Of a DNA stretch of 64,000 bases, positions 7,625-43,929 are shown one piece after another. This DNA is from Macrostomum lignano (Eukaryota). Below the pieces are notes generated by a model, which saw only the letters and a list, made by a program, of their open reading frames with translations, was not told where the DNA came from and made no database searches. The translations under genes were made by a program, and so were the position numbers. Numbering within the stretch: the first letter of the stretch is position 1; the number at the start of each line of letters is the position of its first letter. The stretch covers positions 1 through 64,000 of the forward strand of contig NIVC01000948.1 of the NCBI GenBank assembly GCA_002269645.1, read 5' to 3'.

Positions 7625-9784
7625 CTTACTTGACTTAGCTGCAGGGCGGTCCGAAGACGCAGCGGGGAGGCGAGCGTCGCCCATTCCGCTAATCCCTGAA
7701 AGACCCGCAAAGGCTAGGGCGCGGGGCCGGTCAGGGAGGTCTGCCGGTCCTGTCTGCAGCGTTGTCTTCGGTGGCTCGTTTGGTAGCCCGGAGGAACCGG
7801 ATGAGCCGTGGGATGTTCTCGGGCCGGCAAACGTCAACCAGGGACGGGTTGGGCCCGAGGTGGTTGAGCCGGTCTCGGTTGAAGGCCGGGCAGTAGCAGA
7901 CGAAGTGCTTGGCATCTTCATTCTCGAGGCTGCAGAAGGGGCAGAGTTCACTCCGGCGAAAACTTCGGAGGAAACAGTGCCTGGCAAAGCAACCGTGACC
8001 TGTGAAGGTCATAGTGAGAGCGCAGATATCTTTTCGATTTTGATTCAAAAGGATTCTTCGCAGCTTGAGGGACGGATTGGGCACTGCCGCACGAGATTGG
8101 CGGCAGTTGGAGATACCATCCCATCTGCACAAGTGCAGGATGTCCGCCCAGTCGTTAATCTGACGATTAATGACCGTGGCGGGGATGGGGGCCAGGGGCA
8201 CGGGGCCAAGGGGCGAGCCGGAACAGCCTGCCTTAGCGAGGGAGTCGGCGAGCTCGTTACCTTTGAACCCAGCGTGTCCTGGGATCCACGTATGCCGGAC
8301 GGTGTTCCTCCGAGCCAGCTTGTTGAGCTGCCCGATACAGTCGCGGACTGTTCGGGAGTTCGTAGTGATGTGACACAGGGCCTGCAAAGCGGCTTGGCTG
8401 TCAGAGTGGAAGAAGATTCTTCTGTCCTTGAAGTCCCTGCAGTAGAGCTCAGCTGCACAGGAGCTGATGGCAAGGACTTCGTTCTGGAAGACGCTGGAGA
8501 GTCTGCCAGTGTGTTGGGCGTGAGTAGCGATCACGCGGCCGTTGATAAGGATACAGACTCCAAAGCCGGATAAACCGTCTTTGGAGGATCCGTCAGTGAA
8601 GCAGTGAGCCTCCTGAGGGGCCCAGCTGTCGTTGGCGTTCTCCCTAGAGGGGATAGTGACCTTGAAGCGTTGATTGAGGGAGCGCGGCTCAGCGTCCGAA
8701 AGGACAGCCGCATTCCCACTCTCCTCCAGAACTTTAAGGCTCAGGTCAGAGTGCGGCAGGAGCTTGCGCTCTTTGTGGCTTGAAGCTAACGCCAGCCTCG
8801 ATGAGCCGGCGGGTGGTTTTAGCAGCCTCGCGACGGACAAAGATGTCCAGAGGCGGGAGGCAGAGAAAGGCGTTGAGGCCGTCAAAGGGAGCAGAGAGCG
8901 GGCCATTCAGAATAATGCGGCACGCGCGTCCCTGCACCTTTTTAAGGGCTTCGTAGCAGGTTTTAATCTGCAAGGCGCTGGTCCAGTCCAGGCCGGCGTA
9001 AGTAACGGCCGGTCGGACCATTGCGGTGTAGATCCACCAGAGCCGTTTTGGGGTGAGGCCCCAGGTGGTGCCGACGGCTCTGCGCAGCTGCGCAAGAATC
9101 GCGAGGGCTTTTTTGGTTTTGGCCTGGACGTGGGTGGACCAGCTCAGCCGGTGGTCCAGCGTAACGCCGAGACACTTGGTTTGCTTGCAGGATGGGATTT
9201 CCACCCCGTAAAGCTTTAGTGGGCGAATACGCCAGTTGACCCTGCTGGTGAATATGATCGCGACAGTTTTGGTCTCAGAGAGCCTGAGGCCGCACCTGTC
9301 CGCCCATTGTTCAGCAGAGCGAATAAAGTTTTGCAGAAGATCCCTAAGGGTTTCGGGTGACGGTCCGGATGCTACGGCTGTAACATCATCGGCGTAACCG
9401 ACCTTAAGGATGAGGTCCAGATGGCTGTCCTGAAGGAGCTCATCGATGACCATGTTCCAGAGAACTGGAGAGAGGACACCGCCCTGGGTGCTGCCTTTGC
9501 AGACGGTTACCGTCCGTTGGTGGCCCAGCAGGTGTGGGGTGGCAGTGCGGTGGCTGATCATATACATGATCCACCGGGTGAGGTGCGGGTGGGTTCCTCT
9601 AGCACGTAGAGCTCTGTCAAAGGCCTCAAAGAGGACATTATCTAAGGCTCCAACAATGTCGAGGAAGACAGCGAGAGCGTAGCCATTACCAAGAACGGCT
9701 TTCTCCAGCATGTCGACCAAGGCATGAAGCGCGCTCTCCGTGGACCGGCCTGCCCGAAAGGCGTGCTGGTTCTCACTGAGCGGC
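7625..9784 (-). mobile_element. 5'-truncated non-LTR retrotransposon, LOA/Lian-like (RT + RNase H + CCHC finger)
   Basis: Flanked by exact 15-bp direct repeat CTGAAATCCCCCTGA at 7610-7624 and 9785-9799 (TSD); 3' end has short tandem tail TAAGTCAAGTAAGTCA; clade call rests on motif style (QGGVLSPVLWN, GYADD, WGLTPKRLWWIYTAMVRP) plus RNase H. Confidence 0.9.
7731..9784 (-). pseudogene. Disrupted LINE ORF2: reverse transcriptase (from QHAFRAGRSTESAL) and RNase H (FTDGS, SDSQAAL, WIPGHAGFKGNELAD)
   Basis: RT in ORF 8746..9720 and RNase H in ORF 7731..8906 are in different frames (frameshift near 8775); GSTQG and GALDN deviate from consensus GxPQG and GAFDN; CPFC..HFVCYC zinc knuckle. Confidence 0.9.
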
Positions 9785-14129: not shown

Positions 14130-14257
14130 TAAATTTAGACCACATCTATGGCAAAAAGCTTAAATCGAAAAACTTTGCTTTCCTTCTTAGCATAATTAAC
14201 AATCTCAGTTTTTTAAAGCTTTTTAAAATAGCGAGGAAGTCACAAGAAAGCACCGCC

Positions 14258-14878
14258 ATGCATGCCTTGAAGTCTGTTTTGCTCTGCTCTGGCAGTATCG
14301 TTCGGTCTATCCAGGGAACCTCGTACCTATCCATACTGATCATTCTGGTCTTGGCTGCCTACATTCTCCGACCCGCATTGCTGTACATCAACCGGCTGCT
14401 GCACACCACCGGTAGCAGTGGTCGGCATGCCACCCAGAGACTGCTAACATCGGTAATTGCCATGGTGATCAAGATATCCAGGGCCAACTATCGAACCTCC
14501 CGAGTCATACGCGAGGCGAGCAAGCGGACAGAGAATTTCCTGCACGCTCTGCTGGTGCTGCCGCTCATCTGCTTGCAGATATTCGACCTGTCATTCATAT
14601 TGTTCGACTTCTTTCGGGCAGTCATCATGGTGTTTGCCAACTTCATGGGCGTGGTGTTCTCCTACGCAATCTTCATATTCAACACCTACAAGATCGTGGT
14701 GATGTGCACAGCCAGCATCATGCTGTCAGTGTACTACACATCGTACTACTCAATCCTGCTCATCCGTAGCGGTCTCGCATGCCTGGACTCGTTCCGAGCC
14801 CTGATGCAGCACAACTCTCTCCGGCTGCTCCTCATCCGGTATAAGGAGCAGAAAATGCGAGTAGCCAATGTTCTGTGA
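14258..14878 (+). CDS. Intronless 206-aa hydrophobic (probably multi-pass membrane) protein, family unrecognised
   Basis: Non-repetitive open frame with C-ending codon bias; several long apolar segments (YLSILIILVLAAYIL; FLHALLVLPLICL; VIMVFANFMGVVFSYAIFIF; IVVMCTASIMLSVYY). Confidence 0.6.
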   Translation: MHALKSVLLCSGSIVRSIQGTSYLSILIILVLAAYILRPALLYINRLLHTTGSSGRHATQRLLTSVIAMVIKISRANYRTSRVIREASKRTENFLHALLVLPLICLQIFDLSFILFDFFRAVIMVFANFMGVVFSYAIFIFNTYKIVVMCTASIMLSVYYTSYYSILLIRSGLACLDSFRALMQHNSLRLLLIRYKEQKMRVANVL

Positions 14879-16140: not shown

Positions 16141-16845
16141 GACAGACAGACAGTTGCTACACAAATTATTAATAAATAGACGGAGACATCAGGACAGACA
16201 GAGACTAAGACAGACAGACAGACAGACACTAAGACAGACAGATAGACAGACACTAAGACAGACAGACAGACAGACAGACAGACACTAAGACAGACAGACA
16301 CTAAGACAGACAGATAGACAGACACTAAGACAGACAGACACTAAGACAGACAGACAGACAGACACTAAGACAGACAGATAGACAGACACTAAGACAGACA
16401 GACAGACAGACACTAAGACAGACAGACAGACAGACACTAAGACAGACAGACAGACAGACACTAAGACAGACAGATACTAAGACAGACAGACACTAAGACA
16501 GACAGATAGACAGACACTAAGACAGACAGACAGTTGCTACACAAATTATTAATAAATAGACGGGCAGACACCAGGACAGACAGAGACTAAGACAGACAGA
16601 CAGACAGACACTAAGACAGACAGACAGACAGACACTAAGACAGACAGATGGACAGACACTAAGACAGACAGACAGACAGACAGACACTAAGACAGACAGA
16701 TAGACAGACACTAAGACAGACAGATAGACAGACACTAAGATAGACACTGAGACAGAGGGACACTAAAGCAGACACTAGAACAGACAGCCACTATGACTAC
16801 ACGAAGGCAGAAAAGACAGACAGACACAAGTACAGACAGACAAGC
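16141..16845. repeat. (GACA)n array punctuated by CACTAA, with a 380-bp internal duplication
   Basis: Unique segment CAGTTGCTACACAAATTATTAATAAATAGACGG occurs at 16151 and 16531. Confidence 0.92.
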
Positions 16846-18294: not shown

Positions 18295-18959
18295 TCAGTT
18301 CCAGTCCTGTCTGGCCCGCAGTCGCGTACAGGCCGAGGTAATAACACAATGCAATCCTATTTTCAATGTGAGAAACATGCTGAGGGTTTAGAGTAAAGGG
18401 AAGGGGAGAGAATTTCGCTAATCCCCTTCTGTCCTAGGCAGATCTATCATTGGCCAGGTCCTCACTTACCCCTGTCAGCTCTACAGATCCCCCGCGCGTC
18501 TGTCTCGCCTTCCTACCCGCCTCCCGCTGTTTTCTCCCCGCTGTCTCTCTCCTCCCCTCACCTCAATGTTTAATGGCCTCAGCCAATGTTTGCCTCGACC
18601 ACAGAAAGCCTTTCTCCACCCTCAATACTCTCTTCAAGAGAGCAGTTCAGCTGACTCCGAAGCCTCAACTCATTATAAACTGTATTAACAGAAATCAGGC
18701 AGTGAAAAAAACTTGTGCAACAGACTAAAAGCATCGGACCAGACTTTCACTTCTCTCTGCCCTCGAATGAAACAGAAAGAACTCAAGTTTGTCAGGTCGA
18801 TGTCCTCACTGCTCCGGGCGCACCTTTGCCTGCTGGTCTGCACTCCGGTGATCATCGATTTTGGTGAGCCTAATTAAATGAGACTTCTGTGCTTATTGTT
18901 AGTAATAATTAGAAATTTTACAAAAATTCAATCGATTCTGCGCCCCTCCAGCTATGGGT

Positions 18960-19471
<512 letters not shown>

Positions 19472-20739
19472 GTGCCTCATCAGTCCATTAGCCGAGTCCC
19501 TATCCTTAAGCCTAGTCAGTTGAAATGCACAACACGGAGGTCAAAGTGTGCCGATTGCATGCTGTGCCGATAACAAAGAAAACTGACTGAGGTCAGGAAA
19601 AACACGAACGCATCTCGGATACCCCGTGACAGTCAGTTAAGTGAATAAAATGCTGGACAATCTTTATAACTATTGCGGCTGACTTGTCAGCGTGGCGGCG
19701 AGGTCGGTCGACGTCCCTCATAGTATCCATTTTCCCTGAAATCCTGCAGCAGGCCTTTGCTTCCCTGGACACGAGTTTCCTTCTAGCATGCATGCAACTA
19801 GAAGAGGCTGAGGGCAGAAGCTGTTTCTGATGGAAAGCAGAAAGCAGCTTCCCCGAGGCGGTCAGAAAAACATCAGAATGATAATTGAAAAAGCGTCTAA
19901 ACCAAGGAAGTTCTCTTAAAGTTCCAAAATTTTCAAAATCACATTGGAGTTTAACTTAGCTCTGGCTTATTTTGTACACCCTGAGTTTTTAACAGCATTG
20001 CTCATGGACTGCTGCTCATTAGCAGAAAAATTGATGTGTGTGTGTGCTTTATTAATCAGCCATGTGGGATCCTTATTCGCCTCGTTGTGAAAGATTCTGT
20101 GGCTTCCCATGTCAAACCAGTAACTTCATTTTGCTCGAGATCCAGACATGCTACAACTCTTTGTCTTAGGAGAAAAGCAAAGGATTTTTATGGAGTCTAT
20201 CTGTTGCGGGAGGCAAGCACGGAAGCAAAATGCGTTTACCTCCAGACGTCATTGCCATAAACTTACTTGAGCAATTAGCCACTTCAGATAGGGTGCACTA
20301 AACAAGACATTTAAAGAAAAATAGTCTCAACCAGTTTTTGAGAGATGAAGCTGTCCAGCGAAGGCTGTAATTATTGAAACAAAGAAAGCGCTCAACAACG
20401 CCGCCACAAATTCTGAGAGGCACTTGAGCGACACTGCGCGATACCAGTTTTTCCAGTAATCCGAGACAAATTACTACTCGCTATAACAATGTGAAGAGGT
20501 TTCGAAGTTCCAGACCAGCGCATAAGAGCAAATGCACCAATGTAGCACTAAAACACATTCTTGCAAAATATACCAACCAAACTGGACTGTTTAGGGCGGG
20601 ATTTAGGTTTAGTCCAAGCGAACTTGAAACAAGTGTCTGCATCGACAGTCTGGGACACTAATTACCGTGCGACAGACGATTAAGTACAACAAAACAACTT
20701 GACAACAAGTTTAATTGCTTTGCCAAACAAGCCGTTCTC

Positions 20740-20747
20740 TATAAAAG
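20740..20747 (+). promoter_or_regulatory. Candidate TATA box (TATAAAAG) for the temptin-monooxygenase gene
   Basis: About 80 nt before ATG 20822; GGGCGG box near 20593. Confidence 0.55.
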
Positions 20748-20821: not shown

Positions 20822-22723
20822 ATGAAGACTGTGCTCAAAGTTCTCGTGGCGGCACTCGTGCCGCTGCAGTTCGCGATGGCTCATATCGAGTTTGAATCCC
20901 GTATCCCGAACGGCGACCGCGTCCCGAACCCGTGTCGGGACGGCGCCGTCTGGTCCGACGACAAAAACCCCTTCGGCTTCGACTTCAAAGCCGCCGGACA
21001 ACAGTGGACGGCCGACCTGTGCCGCAAGGACTCGGACGGCGACGGACTTACGAATGGCCAAGAGCTCGGAGATCCCGACTGCGTGTGGACGGTCGGAGCG
21101 GCTCCGGCGAGGATGACTGGACTTTCTCACCCCGGCATCTGCCCGATCGACTCCGCCGCATGCAAGAACTCATGGACCAAGTGCCCGAAGGCGTTCAGCT
21201 GTCCAGCAATGGAAGAACCCGGTGTGACCGTGAGGAACTTTACCGTCAAACCCACCGCTGTGCCGACCTATGAGAAAATGCATCTTTGCCAGGCGTTCGA
21301 ACTGAACAACACCGCCTCTCCGGTTCACATGATCGGATCGCGGCCGATCATGGTCAACAAGAACGTCATAAGGCATATGGTTATGTACGGCTGCTCGCAG
21401 AAACCCGATCAGGCTCTGTTTGACTCACCTCAGCAATGCTACATGGGCTCCTACCCAAACTGCATCGAATTGATCAACCTGTGGGGCGAAGGCAACGAAG
21501 GCGAGTGCTTCAGTAGATTCTCCGGGTTTCGAGTCGGCGGAGAAGGATTTCAATACGGCATGCTGAGCCTGAAACCGGCGAAAACGAATGGCTTCATCAA
21601 CGAAGCTGGATTATCTATCTACTTCACAAGCAATCTACGACCCCACGATCAGGGAACGCTGACGTACGGTGAGCTTGAACTCATCCTGCCGCCGAGACGT
21701 ACTGTGGTCAACTATAACCACACCTGCCCGTCAGTGTGCACCAGATCGTTCCACAGTGAGACTCGGTACATTACCGCCGCATCAATTTACATGCAAAGTT
21801 ACGCTACGAAAGGCCGGCTTTCTCTATGGCGGAACGGAGCGCTTGTACAAGACCTGGTGCCGCTTCACGCTTACGAATACAACGTACCTAGGGTGCTTCT
21901 GTTCGACCCGCCAGTGGAATATCGCAGAGGAGACGAAATCAAGACTGAGTGCTACTACAGCACAAAAGGAAACAACCATTCGGTACTTTTTGGCTACGGC
22001 AGCAACGATGAAACGTGCCTATCATTTATGCACTACTACCCGAACAATATACACCTTAGTCCGCTAGCCAAGCTTGAGTTTTGCAACTCCATTCACGGCT
22101 ACAATCCTTGCTGGAATGACACAGGCATTACCCCTCATATTGAGAATGGCTGCAACATCACCGGTTTAATCACTGGCGATGGACTGAAGCCTGTGTACAT
22201 GGCGATGTGGAGACACCAATGCTTTGTCTCGATGGGATGCAGCGCCGCCTGCCAAGAGTACATGAGCAACACTCTGTTCCCCTCCAATGCCTGCTTCGAT
22301 CCGAAGAGGTCTCTGAAAGCGCTGGAGTACCTGTATATCCGATACCATAGTCCTCTGTCTCATCAGGCTAAAGGGTATATGAATTCCATGTACCCGATTT
22401 TAAAAAGCTGCCAGAGTCAGATTGAGACGCTGGCACTGCTGGATCAGGCGCGACTCGCCAGTAAGCCAGCTGTCAATCCGCCAGCGGTGAAGTCAATCCC
22501 GCCTGCTGATTGCAACACAGGCAAGCCGCATGAGGAGGTGCTGACGTCGAAGAACCTGCTGGTCATCATCGTTGTGTGCAGCTGCCTGGTCTTCGCTCTG
22601 CTGGCTGCCGTTCTGCTGCTAGTTGTGCGAATTCGCAAGCTGAGGCTTCGCGATTCGCCAACCAAGCTGCGAAATGAGCAAGATGAAGCTGGAAAGGAGA
22701 AGGTGTACAATGCGTATGGTTGA
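20822..22723 (+). CDS. Temptin-domain + DBH/MOXD-like copper type II monooxygenase-fold protein, type I membrane, probably catalytically dead (633 aa, intronless)
   Basis: Signal peptide; temptin motif RIPNGDRVPNPC..NPFGFDF..WTADLCRKDSDGDGLTNGQELGDPDCVW; monooxygenase N-domain (HMVMYGC, AGLSIYFTSNLRPHD) and C-domain (RGDEIKTECYYST, GYGSNDETCLSFMHYYP); TM LLVIIVVCSCLVFALLAAVLLLVV followed by RIRKLR. Confidence 0.92.
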   Translation: MKTVLKVLVAALVPLQFAMAHIEFESRIPNGDRVPNPCRDGAVWSDDKNPFGFDFKAAGQQWTADLCRKDSDGDGLTNGQELGDPDCVWTVGAAPARMTGLSHPGICPIDSAACKNSWTKCPKAFSCPAMEEPGVTVRNFTVKPTAVPTYEKMHLCQAFELNNTASPVHMIGSRPIMVNKNVIRHMVMYGCSQKPDQALFDSPQQCYMGSYPNCIELINLWGEGNEGECFSRFSGFRVGGEGFQYGMLSLKPAKTNGFINEAGLSIYFTSNLRPHDQGTLTYGELELILPPRRTVVNYNHTCPSVCTRSFHSETRYITAASIYMQSYATKGRLSLWRNGALVQDLVPLHAYEYNVPRVLLFDPPVEYRRGDEIKTECYYSTKGNNHSVLFGYGSNDETCLSFMHYYPNNIHLSPLAKLEFCNSIHGYNPCWNDTGITPHIENGCNITGLITGDGLKPVYMAMWRHQCFVSMGCSAACQEYMSNTLFPSNACFDPKRSLKALEYLYIRYHSPLSHQAKGYMNSMYPILKSCQSQIETLALLDQARLASKPAVNPPAVKSIPPADCNTGKPHEEVLTSKNLLVIIVVCSCLVFALLAAVLLLVVRIRKLRLRDSPTKLRNEQDEAGKEKVYNAYG

Positions 22724-23431: not shown

Positions 23432-26400
23432 CTTCAGCCGCCTCAGAGACTTTGGGCGTCAACATCCGGGTGAACGTCACCCTGCCCAGCATCCAGCTGT
23501 CCTGCGACGTCACAAACGGAGGCGACGCCGTAGATGCGCACGAAGTCCAGTTCTACTGTCCGGCCGCCGCGCCCGAGGACGACTCGATTCGCAGCCAGAA
23601 ATGCTTCGGCGACTGCAACCCGATCTGCGTGATGCAGGCCGACGCCACCTGCAAGGTGATGCACCAGGAGCTTCTGCCGCCCAGAACGCAGTGCCGCAAG
23701 ATTCTGCCGCTAAATGGTGCCAAGACTGTTCAGCTTCTCGTTGACACGTCAGTCGAACGCTTGGCTGGCGAGTGGTACTGCAAGTTTCGCGGTCAGAGGA
23801 GCACCCCGGTATCGCTCAGCCATTACAAGATGCCACCGCCGCCGCCTCCGCCTCCGGTCACTGCTAAGGAGCCGACAACTACAGCCGTTGCGAAGACGGT
23901 GGAAATGATTACAACTACTGTTAGAGGTGAGTTCAGTTTGGTGCATTGCAAAGCAAGTTTGGGTTTTGCAGTGGGATTATATCAACCTCAGATATCAATC
24001 TGGTGCTTCGGGTATCAACCTTGCGCCTCAGATATCAATCTGGTGCCTCTGGTATAAATCTAGCGCCTTAGATATCAATCTGGCGCCTCGGGTAATAATC
24101 TGGCGCCTCAGGTATCAATCAGGCGCCTCAGATATCAATCTGGTACCTCAGATATCAATCTGGTGCCTCGGGTATCAATCTGGTGCCTCAGATATCAATC
24201 TGGCGCCTCAGATATCAATCTGGTGCCTCGGGTATCAATCTGGTGCCTCAGATATCAATCTGGCGCCTCAGATATCAATCTGGTGCCTCGGGTATCAATC
24301 TGGTGCCTCAGATATCAATCTGGCGCCTCAGATATCAATCTGGCGCCTCAGATATCAATCTGGTGCCTCAGATATCAATGTGGTGCCTCAGATATCAATC
24401 TGGCGCCTCGGGTATCAATCTTGCGCCTCAGATATCAATCTAGTGCCTTGGGTATCAATCTGACGCCTCAGATATCAATCTGGCGCCTCAGATATCAAAC
24501 TGGCGCCTCAGATATCAATCTCGCGCCTCAGATATCAATCTCGCGCCTCAGATATCAAACTGGCGCCTCAGATATCAAACTGATCGTCAGTAGATCAATC
24601 TGGCGCCTCAGACATCCATGCAGCGCCTCTGGTCTATCAAAAGTCCTCATTGACAGCTCAATGTCTATGAATCGTACGTGCGTTTGCTCATCGCCAAAAC
24701 TGCAAACTTTTTATTAAAGCAGTATTTTTCCAGTTTTTTTTCTGTCTGGGAGAAAAAAACGTCGCCCAAAAAGAAGATTCCTTACTGATTATTATTCATA
24801 TTTATGTCGTCTGGCTACCCATTGTTTAAGTCACGCCACCTAGAGAAGTCTGTCAATCACAGTGTTCCACCTGATTGTAAGGTTTATTATGATTAAAACT
24901 GAACCTTGTAAAGCAGTAAAAAGATCTTTAGCGGTAAAGCAAAGTCTAACTTCAAAAGAGTTGCCGCCAAGACAACAAGCAAGTTTAGAATGTCCCCAAC
25001 TGTTTGCACAGGTGTCCTACCGGATCGGCTGGGTAGCGCGTCTTATAACTAAACTTTTATGGCCCAGCAGTTTCTTTACTACGAGTACCTTCCATGATTC
25101 TATTTTTAGACTCTCATGGCTCACTTCTTTTAGCTCATCCTAGCTCATCCTAGTTTATTCTAGACCATCCTAGTTCATGCTAGTTCATCCTAGTTCATCC
25201 TAGTTCATTCTAGTTCATCCTAGTTCATTCTAGTTCATCCTAGTTCATCCTAGTTCATCCTAGTTCATTCTAGTTCATCCTAGTTCATCCTAGTTCATCC
25301 TAGTTCATCCTAGTTCATCCTAGTTCATCCTAGTTCATCCTAGTTCATCCTAGTTCATCCTAGTTCATTCTAGACCATCCTAGTTCATCCTAGTTCATTC
25401 TAGACCATCCTAGTTCATCCTAGTTCATCCTAGTTCATCCTAGTTCATCCTAGTTCATCCTAGACCATCCTAGTTCATCCTAGTTCATCCTAGTTCATCC
25501 TAGCTCATTCTAGTTCATTCTAGACCATCCTAGTTCATCCTAGTTCATCCTAGTTCATCCTAGTTCATCCTAGTTCATTCTAGACCATCCTAGTTCATCC
25601 TAGTTCATCCTAGTTCATCCTAGTTCACCCCAGTTCACCCCAGTTCATCCTAGTTCATTCTAGTTCATCCTAGTTCATCCTAGAATTCATCCTAGTTCAT
25701 TCTAGTTCATCCTAGTTCATCCTAGTTCATCCTAGTTCATCCTAGTTCATCCTAGTTCATCCTAGTTCATTCTAGTTCATTCTAAATCATCTTAGTTCAT
25801 CCTAGAATTCACACTAGTTCATTACTCCCAATTTATATGCCGGCCTGCACTTTTATCCTCAAATCCGTCGCAGCTGCCGCGGAATCGCACAGAGCAGACC
25901 GGAGATGCAGCACTCACTCAATTACCTGCGGGCAGATGGAAGTCAATATCTTAGTCGCAGTCCTCAGACTTGCATCATATACCGTACGTGGATAATGGCT
26001 AGCTTTAGTTTTTAAGTCTGTAAGCCTAACTAACTGAGCACTGCCTTAATCTGACGAGTTGATATAAAATATTAACAGTAAGTTAGCACTTGCAGTATTG
26101 GTCTTCGTACATACGCATAGAATTGTGTGCCTAGGCATCAGATATATAGCTAAGTACTTGGCCCAGACTCCTGGATGGGGAGAGGGTGCCTGGACAGAGA
26201 GCCCCAGCTGCAACTACAATGCTACGTCTGGCAGCGTAAAGGATTAGTCGGTTGTCAAGGCAACTTTTCTCGACTTTTTTCCTCTGCCTCTGGCCTCTCT
26301 TCTCTCTTTCTTCTCTCTGTCATCTCTCAATATGCAAGCCCAAAGCAGGTGAAGTTTGGTCAAGGTAGACGCTGCACTGCAGATCCCGGCCTCTCCTGCC

Positions 26401-29400
26401 CGCCGCACTTCCGCTTTCACTTTCATTCATTCTTTTCAGTTCTTTGCTGAACCCTCCACTCACTTCCTTCTGAGCGGCAAAAGCATATGCTAGTTTGTGA
26501 GCTCAGGGAACGCAGGACTTAGCGAACTGGTAGATATTAACAAGATGTTTACACTATTCTCTTAATTTAAACACCGGATACGCAATCTACCAGTCCGTAG
26601 GTCTGTTCCAGGAGTCCCTGAATGGGTTCCACTCCATGGATAGCATAAGGGTGAAGATAAAGCTTGAGACCTCCGCCTTAGATGACTCACTGCCCAGTGC
26701 TTACCAATTTTTGAAACCTTACTGTTTTAGTAAACTACTTACAATTTTCATGGAACAGTAGTGTCCATGAGTTTTTTTTAACTCGATACGCACTTTGCCA
26801 GTTTACTGAAAGGTTAGACAGCCAATTTAGTGCCAACAGACGAAACACCTCCATCTGTGCAATGTCCATCTAATTTTAAGTCAGTCCTTGTGCCTCCACT
26901 ACTGCTCAAGAACCACCCTCAAAGCATTGTCCAACGTCCTGCATTTGCCCATTCCCTTTTTCAACTGGGTAGCAACCATAATTCTTTAGCCTATTGAGAC
27001 TCTGTCCACTCTCTCCTTTCCAGTTTCTGTTGCACTTCTCCCCGCTCAATCTGTCTTACCCTCCTCTCTTTCACTCTCCCAAGTTGGCCTGCAGCCGAAC
27101 TTCTTGCTTGGGCACTAATTTTCCTCAGCGGGGGTTGGAGACTGGGAAGCAGATGATGCTTTGAGGGTCATTAGCGATGTGTGTAATAACCTTGCCCCAG
27201 GTGCGGGCCAAGCATACCCAGCCTTGCGTACCCTCTGGATGTTTCTTAGAATTCTGAAGTACTCTTGCGCCCGCTTCAGCCGGCGAACCGTTCGATTAAA
27301 AAAACAAACTTATCCATCAAGTTTTGGTCTGAGACAGTGTTTAGATTGCCACCTGATTCGCTTCCCTAAGCCCTTCGCTAATGAGGAATTCGAGGATCTG
27401 CCTAGCAAGCCAAGGGGATATAAGACAGCCAGTCTGTCCCTATAGCCAGGTAAAAAAGGTTGTTTCATCCGTCCGTCCGCAACCAGAACGCTTCTGGTTG
27501 TTGCATCTGTCTGCAGTTTGTCTTTCATTCTGGGTAAGCTGTGGTACCCACATTCTGGGTAAGCTGTGGTACCCACATTCTGGGTAAGCTGTGGTACCCA
27601 CATTCTGGGTAAGCTGTGGTACCCACATTCTGGGTAAGCTGTGGTACCCACATTCTGGGTAATCTGTGGTACCCACATTCTGGGTAAGCTGTGGTACCCA
27701 CATCCTTGGTAAGCTGTGGTACTTATTCTCAATTTTTAAATTATCAACAACGAAAATGATTTTTTAACGTATCTGCATCACATAGAATACTCGTATCTTA
27801 TAATTGTCTATAATAAGTAGTATTCATACTGATAACTAATCAGCCACCTTGATATTCCAACATTTTAAGCTGACGACACGACGTCCGTGGGCGGCTCCAC
27901 CTCTGAGAAGCAGCTGGAAAGTCCGGGTGGCCCGGCCGGCCCCATGCAGCAGCCGGACGGCACTCGGGAAGTGGATCCCAACTGTGAGCGGCTTTCAGTT
28001 GCTGGGTGGTTTTGCATTTGTCGTACTAGTACATGGTTTCAATATGCTTAGCATACACAGCTACCTGTACAAACTGTTTCAATTAGAGCAGGATTTAGAT
28101 AAATTACTGGTTTAAACAAACTATTAATTGATTTAAACAGACTACAAATAAAAAAATCTATATCGATTTAAACAAATTAACAAATAATTGGTTTAAATGA
28201 ACCATTGATTTAAGCAAACTATTGATTTAAACAAATTATTGATTCCGACAAATTTTTAATTGAAATAAAGTAACTTATACAAGTAATTTATACAAATTAA
28301 TGATTTAAAACTAAAGAAACTACTTATTGAAAAGCTATCGATTTAAACCTACAAACAAATTAACAAATTTTTGCTTGAAATAAACTAATTATTTAAACAA
28401 ACTAATGATTTCAACAAATTACTAATTGAAATAAACTAATAATTTAAACAAACTAATGATTTAAACAAATTATTAATTTTTATAAGCTATTGAATAAAAT
28501 AAATTATTTATTTTAAAAAGCTATTGCTTTGAACAAATGATTTATTTAAACAATTGACTGATTCAAACAAACTACTGATTGAAAGAAACATTATTAGTAT
28601 CATTATTAATATTAAACGCTTGTACATAATATCATTAATAAAATATATACTCTCGATTAAATTAAACAATTTGTTTAAACAAACTATCGCTAGTTAAATA
28701 ACAGTACATATTTTAAACAAAATTTAGACCTTGACCTAATTCTGATCCTAACCCTAACCTACTACTAGAATCATATTTTGCTGAGTTCAATCTCAACCGT
28801 TGAATTTTTTGCACCAATCTAAACTCATATTTCAGGGGGGCCGTAGCCCAGCGGTAGCGCAGCTACTCTGGTGTGCCAGCGACCCAGGCTCGATTCCAAG
28901 TGCAGTCACATTAATTTGGGGCTGAATTGGAATCTCGGCTTGGCTCTGCTCGTGCAATTAACGGCCTTGAGAGCCAACCCCCCAAGGCGCAGTGAAGTGT
29001 ACATGCCTAACGATAATATAAAGTTAGGGCCGCTGTACACTCCTGTGTGAGTGTGTGCCTGCGTACGTATCCGCGCGCTTGTGTGCCTGCTCAGGGGAGT
29101 CGGCGGAATGGGCAGTAATGCCTCTCGCCGGTTGTGTGCCTATGTCGCTTAAAGTGCTGCACACAACCCCCTGCCTCTAATAAAAAAAAATAAACTCATA
29201 TTTCCTCTTGAATGGCTTCCCTTCTTGTTCTACCAAAAAGCAACACGATCAGGGGTCGGGGGAGGACAGCGCGAACACGGGAAGCTCGATCTCATTTCCT
29301 AAACAACAGCGAGAGAGGAAGAGACCAGAGCTAGGTGGGGGAAAAACGTTAACTACATAAAACTCCCTGTTACTCATTGAAGCTCCCAGCCAGAGCGTCA

Positions 29401-37231: not shown

Positions 37232-43929
<6,698 letters not shown>

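What the first reader, a model, noticed from the sequence alone, without database searches (positions are those of the whole stretch)
20822..22723. Copper-less temptin-monooxygenase: a membrane-anchored pseudoenzyme with five of six metal ligands replaced
Seen: intact 633-aa ORF with signal peptide, temptin domain, DBH/MOXD fold and C-terminal TM. Established: DBH/PHM/MOXD enzymes need CuH (His-His + His) and CuM (His-x-His + Met). Seen at the aligned positions: HH is RH (IRHMVMYGC, 21371), LxxHY is LSLKP (21572), HxH is YMQ (21788), EMC is ETC (22013). Cysteines and fold motifs are retained and there is no frameshift, which argues for selection on a non-catalytic role. Inference: a cell-surface binding protein or receptor, for example for amines, peptides or pheromone, given that Aplysia temptin is a pheromone component.
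Basis: partly seen in the sequence, partly recalled or inferred. Interest (0 to 1): 0.78.

Follow-up and report, generated by a model that had tools for sequence, protein, structure and literature searches.

The report
Copper-less DBH-like protein in flatworm
A flatworm (Macrostomum lignano) gene encodes an intact, membrane-anchored relative of the noradrenaline-making enzyme dopamine beta-hydroxylase that has lost five of its six copper-binding residues, so it is almost certainly a 'dead' enzyme kept as a scaffold, which is moderately interesting but not unusual for a gene family.

Summary
Window 20822-22723 (+) is an intact 633-aa single-exon gene of Macrostomum lignano (Mlig002911 group): signal peptide, temptin domain, DBH/PHM-type two-domain copper monooxygenase core, Cys-rich helical domain, TM anchor. 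In 120 homologues with this architecture about 115 keep all six Cu ligands; here only one survives (H184R, 3-aa deletion removing the third CuH His, H323Y, H325Q, M398T). New: the temptin domain has also lost its near-invariant GVGH loop (10-aa deletion), plus the ETTY and DSSG motifs, while all 24 conserved cysteines remain and the AF2 model superposes on DBH/PHM. 'Pseudoenzyme' is therefore well supported as loss of DBH-type chemistry. Evidence for continued selection is real but moderate: deep omega is 0.19-0.35 (2x faster than liganded paralogs), three genomic copies are all intact with no indels (5 expected, P=0.006), and the annotation is RNA-based. Between the copies, omega is 0.62-0.68 and not significantly below 1. 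The TM anchor and intronless structure are shared with liganded paralogs, so neither is special. The proposed receptor/pheromone role is untested speculation. New variant of a known kind; moderate interest.

The parts
20740..20747 (+). TATAAAAG, a candidate TATA box about 75-80 bp upstream of the ATG
   Evidence: Read directly from the sequence. Not tested functionally.
20822..22723 (+). Complete single-exon CDS (633 aa plus stop) of the copper-less temptin-monooxygenase. It is the third genomic copy of M. lignano gene group Mlig002911.
   Evidence: The window is NIVC01000948.1. The protein is P0121, and P0001 and P0122 are the other two copies.
20822..20881 (+). Signal peptide (aa 1-20, MKTVLKVLVAALVPLQFAMA, predicted cleavage before H21)
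   Evidence: Hydrophobic h-region and an A-x-A motif are visible in the sequence. It forms a helix in the AF2 model. No dedicated signal-peptide predictor was available.
20879..21139 (+). Temptin_C domain (aa 20-106). It keeps its cysteines, H103 (SHPG) and the DSDGDGxTNGxELGDP calcium-binding-like motif (aa 70-85).
   Evidence: Pfam hit of 98.7 bits, against 126-130 bits in the paralogs. Alignment.
20951..20956 (+). Junction W44|S45, the site of a 10-residue deletion that removes the near-invariant xGVGHxxxxG loop of temptin domains
   Evidence: The loop His is kept in 57/65 stand-alone and 71/75 fused temptin domains.
21242..21565 (+). Cu2_monooxygen N-terminal (CuH) domain, aa 141-248
   Evidence: Pfam hit of 51.6 bits, against 75-96 bits in the paralogs. 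AF2 pLDDT is about 90-98.
21275..21283 (+). K152-M153-H154. The family's ETTY motif is changed (T152K, Y154H). H154 aligns with PHM Tyr79, next to the CuH site.
   Evidence: PHM alignment.
21371..21376 (+). R184-H185. The CuH His-His pair is reduced to Arg-His. H185 is the only surviving ligand.
21569..21574 (+). L250-K251. A 3-residue deletion removes the third CuH His and the following Trp (family LQLHWNNP; here LSL---KP). Also N251K.
21599..21607 (+). N260-E261-A262. The family's DSSG motif is changed (D260N, S262A).
21677..22108 (+). Cu2_monoox_C (CuM) domain, aa 286-429
   Evidence: Pfam hit of 55.2 bits. Foldseek superposition on DBH and PHM.
21788..21805 (+). Y323-M-Q325...A328. The CuM His-x-His motif is replaced by Tyr-x-Gln, and the conserved trailing Gly by Ala.
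22013..22015 (+). T398. The CuM methionine ligand (D-E-M-C) is replaced by Thr.
22109..22492 (+). C-terminal Cys-rich, mostly helical ectodomain module (aa 430-557). All family-conserved cysteines are kept. It occupies the position of the dimerisation domain in DBH.
   Evidence: Conserved cysteines C430, C444, C467, C473, C477, C491 and C530. Helices at 446-547 with pLDDT 85-94. Homology to the DBH dimerisation domain was not shown: the Foldseek match covers only the core.
22556..22627 (+). Transmembrane helix (aa 579-602, LLVIIVVCSCLVFALLAAVLLLVV)
   Evidence: Kyte-Doolittle 19-mer score of 3.23. AF2 helix at 576-610. Shared by paralogs P0002-P0009.
22628..22720 (+). Short basic cytoplasmic tail (aa 603-633, RIRKLRLRD...YNAYG)
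   Evidence: Sequence. Low pLDDT.

Best explanation
The gene encodes a catalytically dead paralogue (a pseudoenzyme) of a flatworm and lophotrochozoan family of temptin-fused, DBH/PHM-type copper monooxygenases.

What the protein is. It is made with a signal peptide and has six N-glycosylation sequons. It sits in the membrane as a type I protein, with its ectodomain facing the lumen or the outside.

Why it is dead (shown by alignment). The O2-activating CuM site has none of its three ligands. The electron-transfer CuH site has one of three. It therefore cannot perform ascorbate- and copper-dependent hydroxylation.

What is kept (shown). The two beta-sandwich domains, all conserved disulfide cysteines, the Ca-binding-like temptin motif, the C-terminal Cys-rich helical module and the anchor are all retained.

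How it most likely works (inferred, not shown). The folded ectodomain is used non-catalytically. The most plausible role is as a partner or regulator that associates with the liganded paralogues, which share the same topology and C-terminal module. A ligand-binding or decoy surface protein is the alternative.

Evolution. The gene arose by an old duplication. It is sister to the liganded A/B/C paralogue clade. It has evolved about twice as fast as those paralogues at non-synonymous sites, but remained constrained overall.
For: Loss of chemistry.
- The ligand columns are HH/H/HxH/M in about 115 of 120 homologues but RH/deletion/YxQ/T here. The mapping to the PHM and DBH ligands comes from pairwise alignments.
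- Of 94 columns that are at least 90% conserved in the family, the query loses 17. All 17 lie in five active-site or temptin-loop clusters, and none of the 24 Cys columns is lost (P = 0.0037). Five of 8 conserved His columns are lost (P = 0.0044).

Fold kept. The AF2 model has mean pLDDT 84.5, with the core mostly 90-98. Foldseek matches DBH 4ZEL at E = 2.7e-23 (rmsd 3.2 A) and PHM at TM up to 0.80.

Constraint.
- Pairwise omega against the paralogues is 0.19-0.35. In the CuM domain pS is saturated (0.72) while pN is only 0.26.
- Three genomic copies on separate contigs are all intact, all 633 aa, and share every loss.
- The copies have 0 indels where 5.1 are expected from the unique flanks (P = 0.006). 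Six of the 7 flank indels would shift the reading frame.

Transcription. The GenBank annotation of this assembly is built only from RNA-seq and transcriptome evidence (PMC5730564). There is a TATA box upstream.

Not a retrocopy. The liganded paralogues are also single-exon genes.
Against: - Between the homeologous copies, the spectrum-corrected omega is 0.62-0.68 and not significantly below 1 (p = 0.07-0.12). The CDS divergence (2.63%) equals that of the unique flanks (2.69%). Liganded paralogue A gives omega 0.49 with p = 7e-4. So recent relaxation, or even the onset of decay, cannot be excluded.
- No orthologue was found in any other species. Long-term retention after the ligand loss therefore cannot be dated.
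- No copy-specific or tissue-specific expression data were found.
- The temptin region shows concerted evolution with the paralogues. Part of its apparent 'conservation' may be due to gene conversion, not selection.
- No evidence bears on any binding partner.
- 3-D distances in the model could not be inspected, so a residual 2-His site (H154 plus H185) is not excluded.
Confidence: 0.6

Rival explanations
1. A gene at the start of pseudogenisation. Constraint was lost fairly recently, shortly before the copies diverged. The ORF is still open in all three copies mainly because too little time has passed. The transcript is a leftover.
For: - Spectrum-corrected omega is 0.62-0.68 and not significant.
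- CDS divergence equals flank divergence.
- The probability of no stop codon under neutrality is 0.17, which is unremarkable.
- The query has the longest branch and twice the dN of its paralogues.
- Losses extend beyond the Cu ligands to the temptin loop and to the ETTY and DSSG motifs.
- No orthologues were found elsewhere.
Against: - There are zero indels in three copies where about 5 are expected (P = 0.006).
- The 17 lost conserved columns avoid all 24 cysteines and 10 of the 11 prolines plus 4 of the 5 tryptophans. Random decay would not do that.
- Deep omega is 0.19-0.35, and the CuM domain has pN 0.26 at saturated pS.
- The AF2 model of the core is confident.
Confidence: 0.25
2. One reading: a cell-surface receptor or binding protein for biogenic amines, peptides or a temptin-type pheromone, retaining the ancestral substrate pocket or the ancestral temptin function.
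For: - Type I membrane topology with a folded ectodomain.
- Temptin is a pheromone component or attractant in Aplysia and Biomphalaria (cited in PMC5685644).
- A Cys-loop ligand-gated channel gene lies 14.5 kb downstream on the same strand. This is adjacency only.
Against: - The anchor is shared with the liganded paralogues, so it says nothing specific about this copy.
- The temptin domain has lost its most conserved loop, which is kept in 128 of 140 temptin domains.
- The cleft-lining ETTY and DSSG motifs are altered.
- The substrate of the whole family is unknown. Nothing shows surface as opposed to secretory-vesicle localisation.
Confidence: 0.1
3. Still an enzyme. It uses a remodelled metal site (for example H154 plus H185, or Tyr323/Gln325 with another metal) or a different chemistry.
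For: - Y154H creates a new His at the position of PHM Tyr79, adjacent to the surviving H185.
- The fold is intact.
Against: - No His, Met or Cys occupies any of the five vacated ligand columns.
- CuM, where O2 is activated, has 0 of 3 ligands.
- The nearest new His and Met (M403, H404) align 5-6 residues down the strand from the Met position, too far to reach the site. This is inferred from the alignment and the residue list.
- From general knowledge, single-ligand mutants of PHM are already inactive or copper-depleted, as the titles of the H107A, H108A, H172A and M314I crystal entries suggest.
Confidence: 0.04
4. An assembly or annotation artefact: a chimeric or mis-assembled ORF.
For: The assembly is highly redundant and repeat-rich (PMC5730564). 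The locus is flanked by tandem arrays.
Against: The same 1902-nt ORF occurs on three independent contigs with 6-50 substitutions and collinear flanks.
Confidence: 0.01

Closest known systems
Liganded temptin-monooxygenase paralogues of M. lignano (Mlig017064/027408 = 'A', Mlig028174 = 'B', Mlig007919 = 'C', Mlig001173) and the wider lophotrochozoan family (molluscs, brachiopod, bryozoan proteins auto-named 'tyramine beta-hydroxylase-like', 'DBH-like', 'MOXD1 homolog', 'Temptin')
   Same: - Same architecture: signal peptide, Temptin_C, Cu2_monooxygen, Cu2_monoox_C and a Cys-rich C-terminal module.
- In Macrostomum, also the same C-terminal TM anchor and single-exon CDS.
- 51-55% identity to paralogues A, B and C.
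   Different: - They keep all six Cu ligands (C keeps five), the GVGH loop, and the ETTY and DSSG motifs.
- A, B and C lie in a tandem cluster, whereas this gene is alone at another locus.
- This gene has about twice their dN.
Human dopamine beta-hydroxylase (PDB 4ZEL), and by extension TBH and MOXD1
   Same: - Two-domain copper monooxygenase core: phmmer 1.2e-16; Foldseek 2.7e-23, rmsd 3.2 A over 298 columns.
- A glycosylated luminal protein with disulfides and a C-terminal helical module after the core.
   Different: - DBH has an N-terminal DOMON domain where this protein has temptin. No DOMON is found here despite the UniRef names.
- DBH has both Cu sites.
- DBH has no C-terminal TM helix.
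- About 21% identity.
Peptidylglycine alpha-hydroxylating monooxygenase (PHM) domain of PAM
   Same: - Same core fold (TM up to 0.80).
- PAM is likewise a type I membrane protein with a short cytosolic tail (established knowledge).
- The ligand mapping could be made residue by residue.
   Different: - No PAL domain here.
- The equivalents of H107, H172, H242, H244 and M314 are all lost.
- The Tyr79 equivalent is His.
Stand-alone temptins (Aplysia and Biomphalaria water-borne attractants; 2,486 temptin-domain representatives)
   Same: The N-terminal domain matches Pfam Temptin_C, with its Cys pattern, DSDGDG...ELGDP motif and SHPG His.
   Different: - Here the domain is fused to a monooxygenase core and membrane-anchored.
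- It lacks the G-V-G-H loop that 57 of 65 stand-alone domains keep.
Other degenerate members of the same family: P0035 (unnamed flatworm-clade transcript, RR / CMH), paralogue C (HxH changed to YxH), Mizuhopecten P0051 (HQ, M changed to A), Sinanodonta P0096 (YxH, M changed to I)
   Same: Sporadic loss of Cu ligands in an expanded family. P0035 belongs to the same flatworm clade (bootstrap 200/200).
   Different: - They lose 1-3 ligands, whereas this protein loses 5.
- P0035 is not its sister (0/200 bootstraps), so the losses are independent.

Membership tests
Copper type II ascorbate-dependent monooxygenases (DBH/TBH/PHM/MOXD) | Two-domain beta-sandwich core recognised by both family profiles | tested here: met
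   PF01082 at 51.6 bits (cut-off 30) and PF03712 at 55.2 bits (cut-off 23). Foldseek DBH E = 2.7e-23; PHM TM 0.7-0.8.
Copper type II ascorbate-dependent monooxygenases (DBH/TBH/PHM/MOXD) | CuH site: His-His pair plus a third His | tested here: not met
   R184-H185, and the third His is removed by a 3-residue deletion. One of three ligands is left.
Copper type II ascorbate-dependent monooxygenases (DBH/TBH/PHM/MOXD) | CuM site: His-x-His plus Met | tested here: not met
   Y323-M-Q325 and T398. None of the three ligands is left.
Copper type II ascorbate-dependent monooxygenases (DBH/TBH/PHM/MOXD) | Conserved intradomain disulfide cysteines | tested here: met
   24 of 24 family-conserved Cys columns are retained.
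Copper type II ascorbate-dependent monooxygenases (DBH/TBH/PHM/MOXD) | Copper binding and ascorbate-dependent hydroxylase activity | not testable with these tools
   Needs recombinant protein, metal analysis and assays.
Temptin domain (Pfam PF24784) | Profile match above the gathering score, with the Cys pattern and the DSDGDG...ELGDP motif | tested here: met
   98.7 bits against a cut-off of 27. Motif and cysteines are invariant in the alignment.
Temptin domain (Pfam PF24784) | Conserved [GA]-[VIL]-G-H loop | tested here: not met
   A 10-residue deletion between W44 and S45. The loop His is present in 128 of 140 other temptin domains.
Temptin domain (Pfam PF24784) | Secreted attractant or pheromone activity | not testable with these tools
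   Behavioural or biochemical assay required. Here the domain is tethered to a membrane protein.
Pseudoenzyme (dead paralogue retained for a non-catalytic role) | Homologous to active enzymes but lacking essential catalytic residues | tested here: met
Pseudoenzyme (dead paralogue retained for a non-catalytic role) | Intact and under purifying selection after the loss of the catalytic residues | tested here: inconclusive
   In favour: three intact copies; 0 indels against 5.1 expected (P = 0.006); cysteines spared (P = 0.0037); deep omega 0.19-0.35. Against: omega between the copies is 0.62-0.68, not significant, and the CDS is as diverged as its flanks. No orthologues are available to date the loss.
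Pseudoenzyme (dead paralogue retained for a non-catalytic role) | Expressed | tested here: inconclusive
   The gene models of this assembly derive only from RNA evidence (PMC5730564). No gene-specific expression value was found.
Processed or decaying pseudogene | Stop codons or frameshifts; intron loss relative to the parent genes | tested here: not met
   None of the three copies has a stop or a frameshift. The parent-type paralogues are also single-exon.
DOMON-containing DBH-like proteins (the name UniRef gives to the paralogues) | N-terminal DOMON domain | tested here: not met
   No DOMON hit in the query or in four paralogues at E <= 0.01. Temptin_C occupies the N-terminus.

The most novel reading that the evidence does not exclude
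The coordinated loss of both copper sites and of the temptin His-loop, in a scaffold that is otherwise preserved, suggests two things.

1. The temptin domain's conserved His pair (the GVGH loop His plus the SHPG His) may be a metal or redox site that works together with the copper core. It would be a functional replacement for the DOMON domain of DBH.

2. This dead paralogue may have been repurposed as a non-catalytic regulatory subunit or surface receptor of the liganded temptin-monooxygenases.

If so, the protein would be a natural 'knock-out' pointing to the mechanism of a large, uncharacterised lophotrochozoan enzyme family, and possibly of temptin pheromones themselves.
Probability: 0.15. 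Interest if true: 0.65.

Novelty: new variant of a known kind. Interest (0 to 1): 0.4.

Why it matters
- Dead members of the DBH/PHM copper monooxygenase family have not been described, as far as I could find. A search for 'DBH-like' plus 'pseudoenzyme' returned no papers, and nothing was found on this gene.
- The protein gives a clean natural contrast with its liganded paralogues in a flatworm where RNAi and transgenesis work. A non-catalytic role of this fold could therefore be tested directly.
- It draws attention to the temptin-fused monooxygenases. This is a large lophotrochozoan expansion with hundreds of genes, one of them abundant in abalone nacre (PMC6003135). Its substrates are unknown.
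- The two conserved temptin histidines have no known role. Co-loss of one of them here is a cheap hint that the temptin module is functionally tied to the copper chemistry.
- The practical importance is modest. The gene is lineage-restricted, and pseudoenzymes are common in enzyme families.

Tried and rejected
1. Retrocopy or processed pseudogene. Rejected: the liganded paralogues A, B and C also have a single-exon CDS, and the gene has its own TATA box.

2. The TM anchor as a special feature of the dead copy. Rejected: all Macrostomum paralogues have it.

3. My first dN/dS result. Plain NG86 gave omega 0.44-0.48 with p = 0.005-0.011, and my first flank estimate was 4.6% divergence. That flank estimate was inflated by tandem arrays. 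With unique flanks only and the observed ts:tv of 47:23, flank divergence is 2.69%, omega is 0.62-0.68 and significance is lost. I report the corrected figures.

4. P0035 as an orthologue of the copper-less lineage. It shares the first-His-to-Arg change, but it is never sister to the query in 200 bootstraps.

5. Is the GVGH loop specific to the fusion proteins? No. Stand-alone temptins keep it as well.

6. Does loss of the GVGH loop co-occur with ligand loss elsewhere in the family? No clear pattern. P0068 lacks the loop but has all ligands.

7. Gene-specific expression. No hit for Mlig002911 in full texts or in the supplements of three M. lignano papers. The exact protein is not found in Logan transcript assemblies.

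8. Literature on the temptin-DBH fusion. Only incidental mentions.

9. Rfam scan of the window. No matches.

10. Inspecting 3-D distances around the former Cu sites. Not possible, because the tools return no coordinates.
Full report
**Identity of the locus.** The window is the first 64 kb of contig NIVC01000948.1 of the Macrostomum lignano assembly GCA_002269645.1. M. lignano is a free-living flatworm. The ORF from ATG 20822 to stop 22721-22723 on the + strand is intact and encodes 633 aa. It is one of three near-identical genomic copies, each on a different contig: P0001 (BOX15_Mlig002911g1), P0122 (g2) and the window's own P0121. The locus is flanked by microsatellite and minisatellite arrays: (CAGA)n at 18960-19472 and a 20-bp array at 23986-24616. 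A TATAAAAG box lies about 75-80 bp upstream of the ATG.

- Pfam finds Temptin_C (aa 20-106, 2.8e-28), Cu2_monooxygen (141-248, 1.4e-13) and Cu2_monoox_C (286-429, 7.4e-15), all above gathering thresholds.
- The nearest solved structures are human DBH (4ZEL, 1.2e-16) and rat PHM.
- The printed pairwise alignments place PHM H107/H108 on R184/H185, H172 on K251, H242/H244 on Y323/Q325, and M314 on T398.
- In a 120-sequence family alignment about 115 members carry HH / H / HxH / M. The query carries RH / a 3-residue deletion (LQLHWNNP becomes LSL---KP) / YxQ / T.
- Given its background loss rate at other conserved columns (0.136), losing at least 5 of 6 ligands has P = 2.5e-4.
- The signal peptide (AMA|H21), six N-glycosylation sequons and a TM helix at 579-602 followed by a basic tail give a type I topology.

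- Of 94 columns that are at least 90% conserved in the other 119 homologues, the query misses 17. They fall into five clusters: a 10-residue deletion removing the temptin xGVGHxxxxG loop; T152K and Y154H in the ETTY motif (H154 aligns with PHM Tyr79, next to CuH); the CuH ligands plus W and N251K; D260N and S262A in the DSSG motif; and the CuM ligands plus G328A.
- None of the 24 conserved cysteine columns is lost (hypergeometric P = 0.0037), while 5 of 8 conserved His columns are lost (P = 0.0044). Full-length paralogues miss 0-3 columns.
- Pfam scores reflect this erosion. Temptin_C scores 98.7 bits against 126-130 in the paralogues, and Cu2_monooxygen 51.6 against 75-96.
- The GVGH loop is not peculiar to the fusion proteins. 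In 140 HMM-aligned temptin domains drawn from 2,486 representatives, the loop His is kept in 57/65 short (stand-alone) and 71/75 long proteins. A second His (SHPG), which the query retains, is kept at a similar rate.

**The fold is preserved.** An AF2 model built on a 79-sequence alignment has mean pLDDT 84.5 and pTM 0.72, and the catalytic core is mostly 90-98. Low confidence is confined to the deletion site in the temptin domain, the linker before the TM helix, and the tail. Foldseek against the PDB returns DBH (E = 2.7e-23, rmsd 3.2 A over 298 columns) and about 30 PHM entries (TM up to 0.80). Only weak hits to unrelated proteins follow.

**Family context.**
- The Temptin_C + Cu2_monooxygen + Cu2_monoox_C architecture is common in Lophotrochozoa: many molluscs, Lingula and a bryozoan. 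Members carry automatic names such as 'tyramine beta-hydroxylase-like'. One such protein is a major component of the abalone nacre matrix (PMC6003135).
- M. lignano has liganded paralogues A (Mlig017064/027408), B (Mlig028174) and Mlig001173, plus C (Mlig007919), which has lost one CuM His. A, B and C lie together in a tandem cluster, whereas the copper-less gene is elsewhere.
- All of them are single-exon genes with a C-terminal TM helix. Intronlessness and membrane anchoring are therefore clade traits. They are signs of neither retroposition nor a new role.
- In an NJ tree the query is sister to the liganded clade (A, B, C and two Logan transcripts). It shares 59-65% identity with them over 424 ungapped columns and has a moderately longer branch.
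- Another degenerate sequence, P0035 (RR / CMH; Logan run SRR30276804), belongs to the same flatworm clade (200/200 bootstraps) but is never sister to the query (0/200). Ligand loss has therefore happened more than once. Two mollusc members have also lost 2-3 ligands.

**Is it under selection?**

*Deep timescale.*
- Pairwise omega of the query against the paralogues is 0.19-0.35, compared with 0.11-0.19 among most liganded pairs.
- Three-taxon decomposition gives the query branch dN 0.24-0.27, against 0.08-0.17 for liganded branches.
- In the CuM domain, synonymous sites are saturated (pS 0.72-0.75) while pN is 0.26.
- The lineage has therefore been constrained overall but is clearly relaxed, at about twice the non-synonymous rate.

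*Short timescale.*
- The three copies differ by 6 substitutions (L001-L002) and 50 substitutions (either copy against L003). None of these changes touches a ligand column, so the losses predate the divergence of the copies.
- Plain NG86 gave omega 0.44-0.48 with p = 0.005-0.011, and I first took flank divergence as 4.6%. That flank estimate was inflated by tandem arrays. With unique flanks only (2,602 columns), divergence is 2.69%, the same as the CDS (2.63%), and ts:tv is 47:23.
- With that mutation spectrum, omega becomes 0.62-0.68 (p = 0.07-0.12). Liganded paralogue A gives 0.49 (p = 7e-4). Substitutions alone therefore do not reject neutrality over this short interval.
- What does reject it is the absence of indels. 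The flanks have 7 indels, 5 of them in non-repetitive contexts and 6 frame-shifting. That predicts 5.1 in the CDS, where there are none (P = 0.006). The probability of having no stop codon is only 0.17, which is uninformative.

*Transcription.* The GenBank annotation of this assembly was derived exclusively from RNA-seq and transcriptome assemblies (PMC5730564), so a model here implies a transcript. I found no gene-specific expression data.

**A complication noticed on the way.** Within M. lignano, the temptin-coding region has low synonymous divergence among all paralogues, the query included (pS 0.12-0.44, against 0.67-0.71 to the other-species sequence P5). The 5' flank and signal-peptide region of P0002 resemble the query's and not those of P0002's own close relative P0125. 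This indicates gene conversion or recombination at the 5' end of these genes. Part of the apparent conservation of the query's temptin domain may therefore be recent homogenisation. It also means the 30-nt loop deletion has either survived such exchange or arisen after it.

**Mechanism.**
- *Shown:* CuM, where O2 is activated in this enzyme class, has none of its three ligands, and CuH has one of three. No His, Met or Cys replaces them in the alignment.
- *Inferred from established knowledge of PHM and DBH:* the protein cannot carry out copper- and ascorbate-dependent hydroxylation.
- *Shown:* the folded, disulfide-rich, glycosylatable ectodomain, the C-terminal Cys-rich helical module and the anchor are kept.
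- *Inferred, with no direct evidence:* the protein acts non-catalytically. Because the liganded paralogues share its topology and C-terminal module, which sits where DBH has its dimerisation domain, I consider association with them (a regulatory or scaffolding subunit) slightly more likely than an independent ligand receptor.
It is weakened by the loss of the temptin loop and by the changes in the cleft motifs.
- I put about 0.9 on 'cannot do DBH-type chemistry' and about 0.6 on 'maintained by selection for a non-catalytic role'. I put about 0.25 on 'early pseudogenisation' and a few per cent on residual or alternative catalysis.

**Membership.** By homology and fold the protein belongs to the copper type II monooxygenase superfamily, and to the temptin-fusion subfamily. 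The defining functional features of the enzyme family, the CuH and CuM sites, were tested and are not met. It should be filed as a non-catalytic homologue and not as a DBH, TBH or PHM. The UniRef label 'DOMON domain-containing protein' on the paralogues is not borne out: no DOMON domain is detected.

**Novelty and interest.** The sequence is already public as a 'hypothetical protein', but its ligand loss appears undescribed, and I found no report of a dead DBH/PHM-family member. It is a new variant of a known kind. Interest is moderate. Pseudoenzymes are common, the gene is lineage-restricted, and selection after the loss is only moderately supported. On the other hand, M. lignano is experimentally tractable, and the co-loss of a conserved temptin His hints at how the uncharacterised temptin-monooxygenase family might work.

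Noticed in passing
window 20822-21200; L005 9700-10400; L004 6139-6800: Mosaic evolution among the paralogues. The temptin-coding region is 82-95% identical at nucleotide level between the copper-less gene and paralogue A (pS 0.31-0.35, against about 0.72 in the CuM domain). The 5' flank and signal-peptide region of P0002 resemble the query's and not those of its close relative P0125. This points to gene conversion or recombination at the 5' ends of these genes.
   Followed up: partly
window 37232-38899 (+): A 555-aa ORF with a strong Neur_chan_LBD match (3.6e-45), i.e. a Cys-loop ligand-gated ion channel gene. It lies about 14.5 kb downstream on the same strand.
   Followed up: partly
window 18767 to beyond 32723 (+): The assembly's annotation has a + strand gene model (620-aa product, no Pfam hit on record) whose range starts at about 18767 and runs past 32723. 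It therefore contains the temptin-monooxygenase gene. It is absent from the two other copies of the locus. It could be a polycistronic or read-through transcriptional unit, or the downstream channel gene with a far-upstream first exon.
   Followed up: no
window 7731-8906 (-): A 391-aa ORF with RNase_H and RVT_3 matches, i.e. a retroelement fragment.
   Followed up: partly
window 16193-16842, 18960-19472, 23986-24616, 25131-25822, 27526-27722: Dense tandem arrays around the gene: (CAGA)n of about 130 copies, and 10-, 20-, 24- and 25-bp minisatellites. They generate long spurious ORFs (for example 18878-19573 and 23927-24717). They also inflated my first estimate of flank divergence.
   Followed up: yes
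window 22076-22096 (aa 419-425): Four of the 28 amino-acid differences between the homeologous copies fall within 7 residues (E419V, F420Q, N422T, H425S), just after the CuM domain. This is either a hypervariable loop or a single multi-nucleotide event.
   Followed up: no
L008 10001-11818 and L009 10001-11818 (paralogue C, P0006/P0131): Paralogue C (Mlig007919) has the same His-to-Tyr change at the first CuM His as the query (IYMH against IYMQ), but keeps the other five ligands. It groups with A, so the change is convergent. C may be a second, partly disabled family member.
   Followed up: partly
temptin domains in general (P0132-P0263; query H103): Two histidines (the [GA][VIL]GH loop His and the SHPG His) are conserved in about 85-95% of temptin domains, whether stand-alone or fused. 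I found no described role for them. They could form a metal site.
   Followed up: partly
L010 (Logan SRR30276804 contig, 1458 nt), gene 191-1372: P0035 is a partial transcript from an unnamed organism in the flatworm clade. It has an independently degenerate Cu-site set: HH changed to RR and HxH changed to CxH, with the third His and the Met kept.
   Followed up: partly
window 14192-14878 (+); L001 3474-4094; L003 3098-3718: A conserved upstream neighbour gene (206-228 aa, no Pfam match) is present at all three copies of the locus.
   Followed up: no
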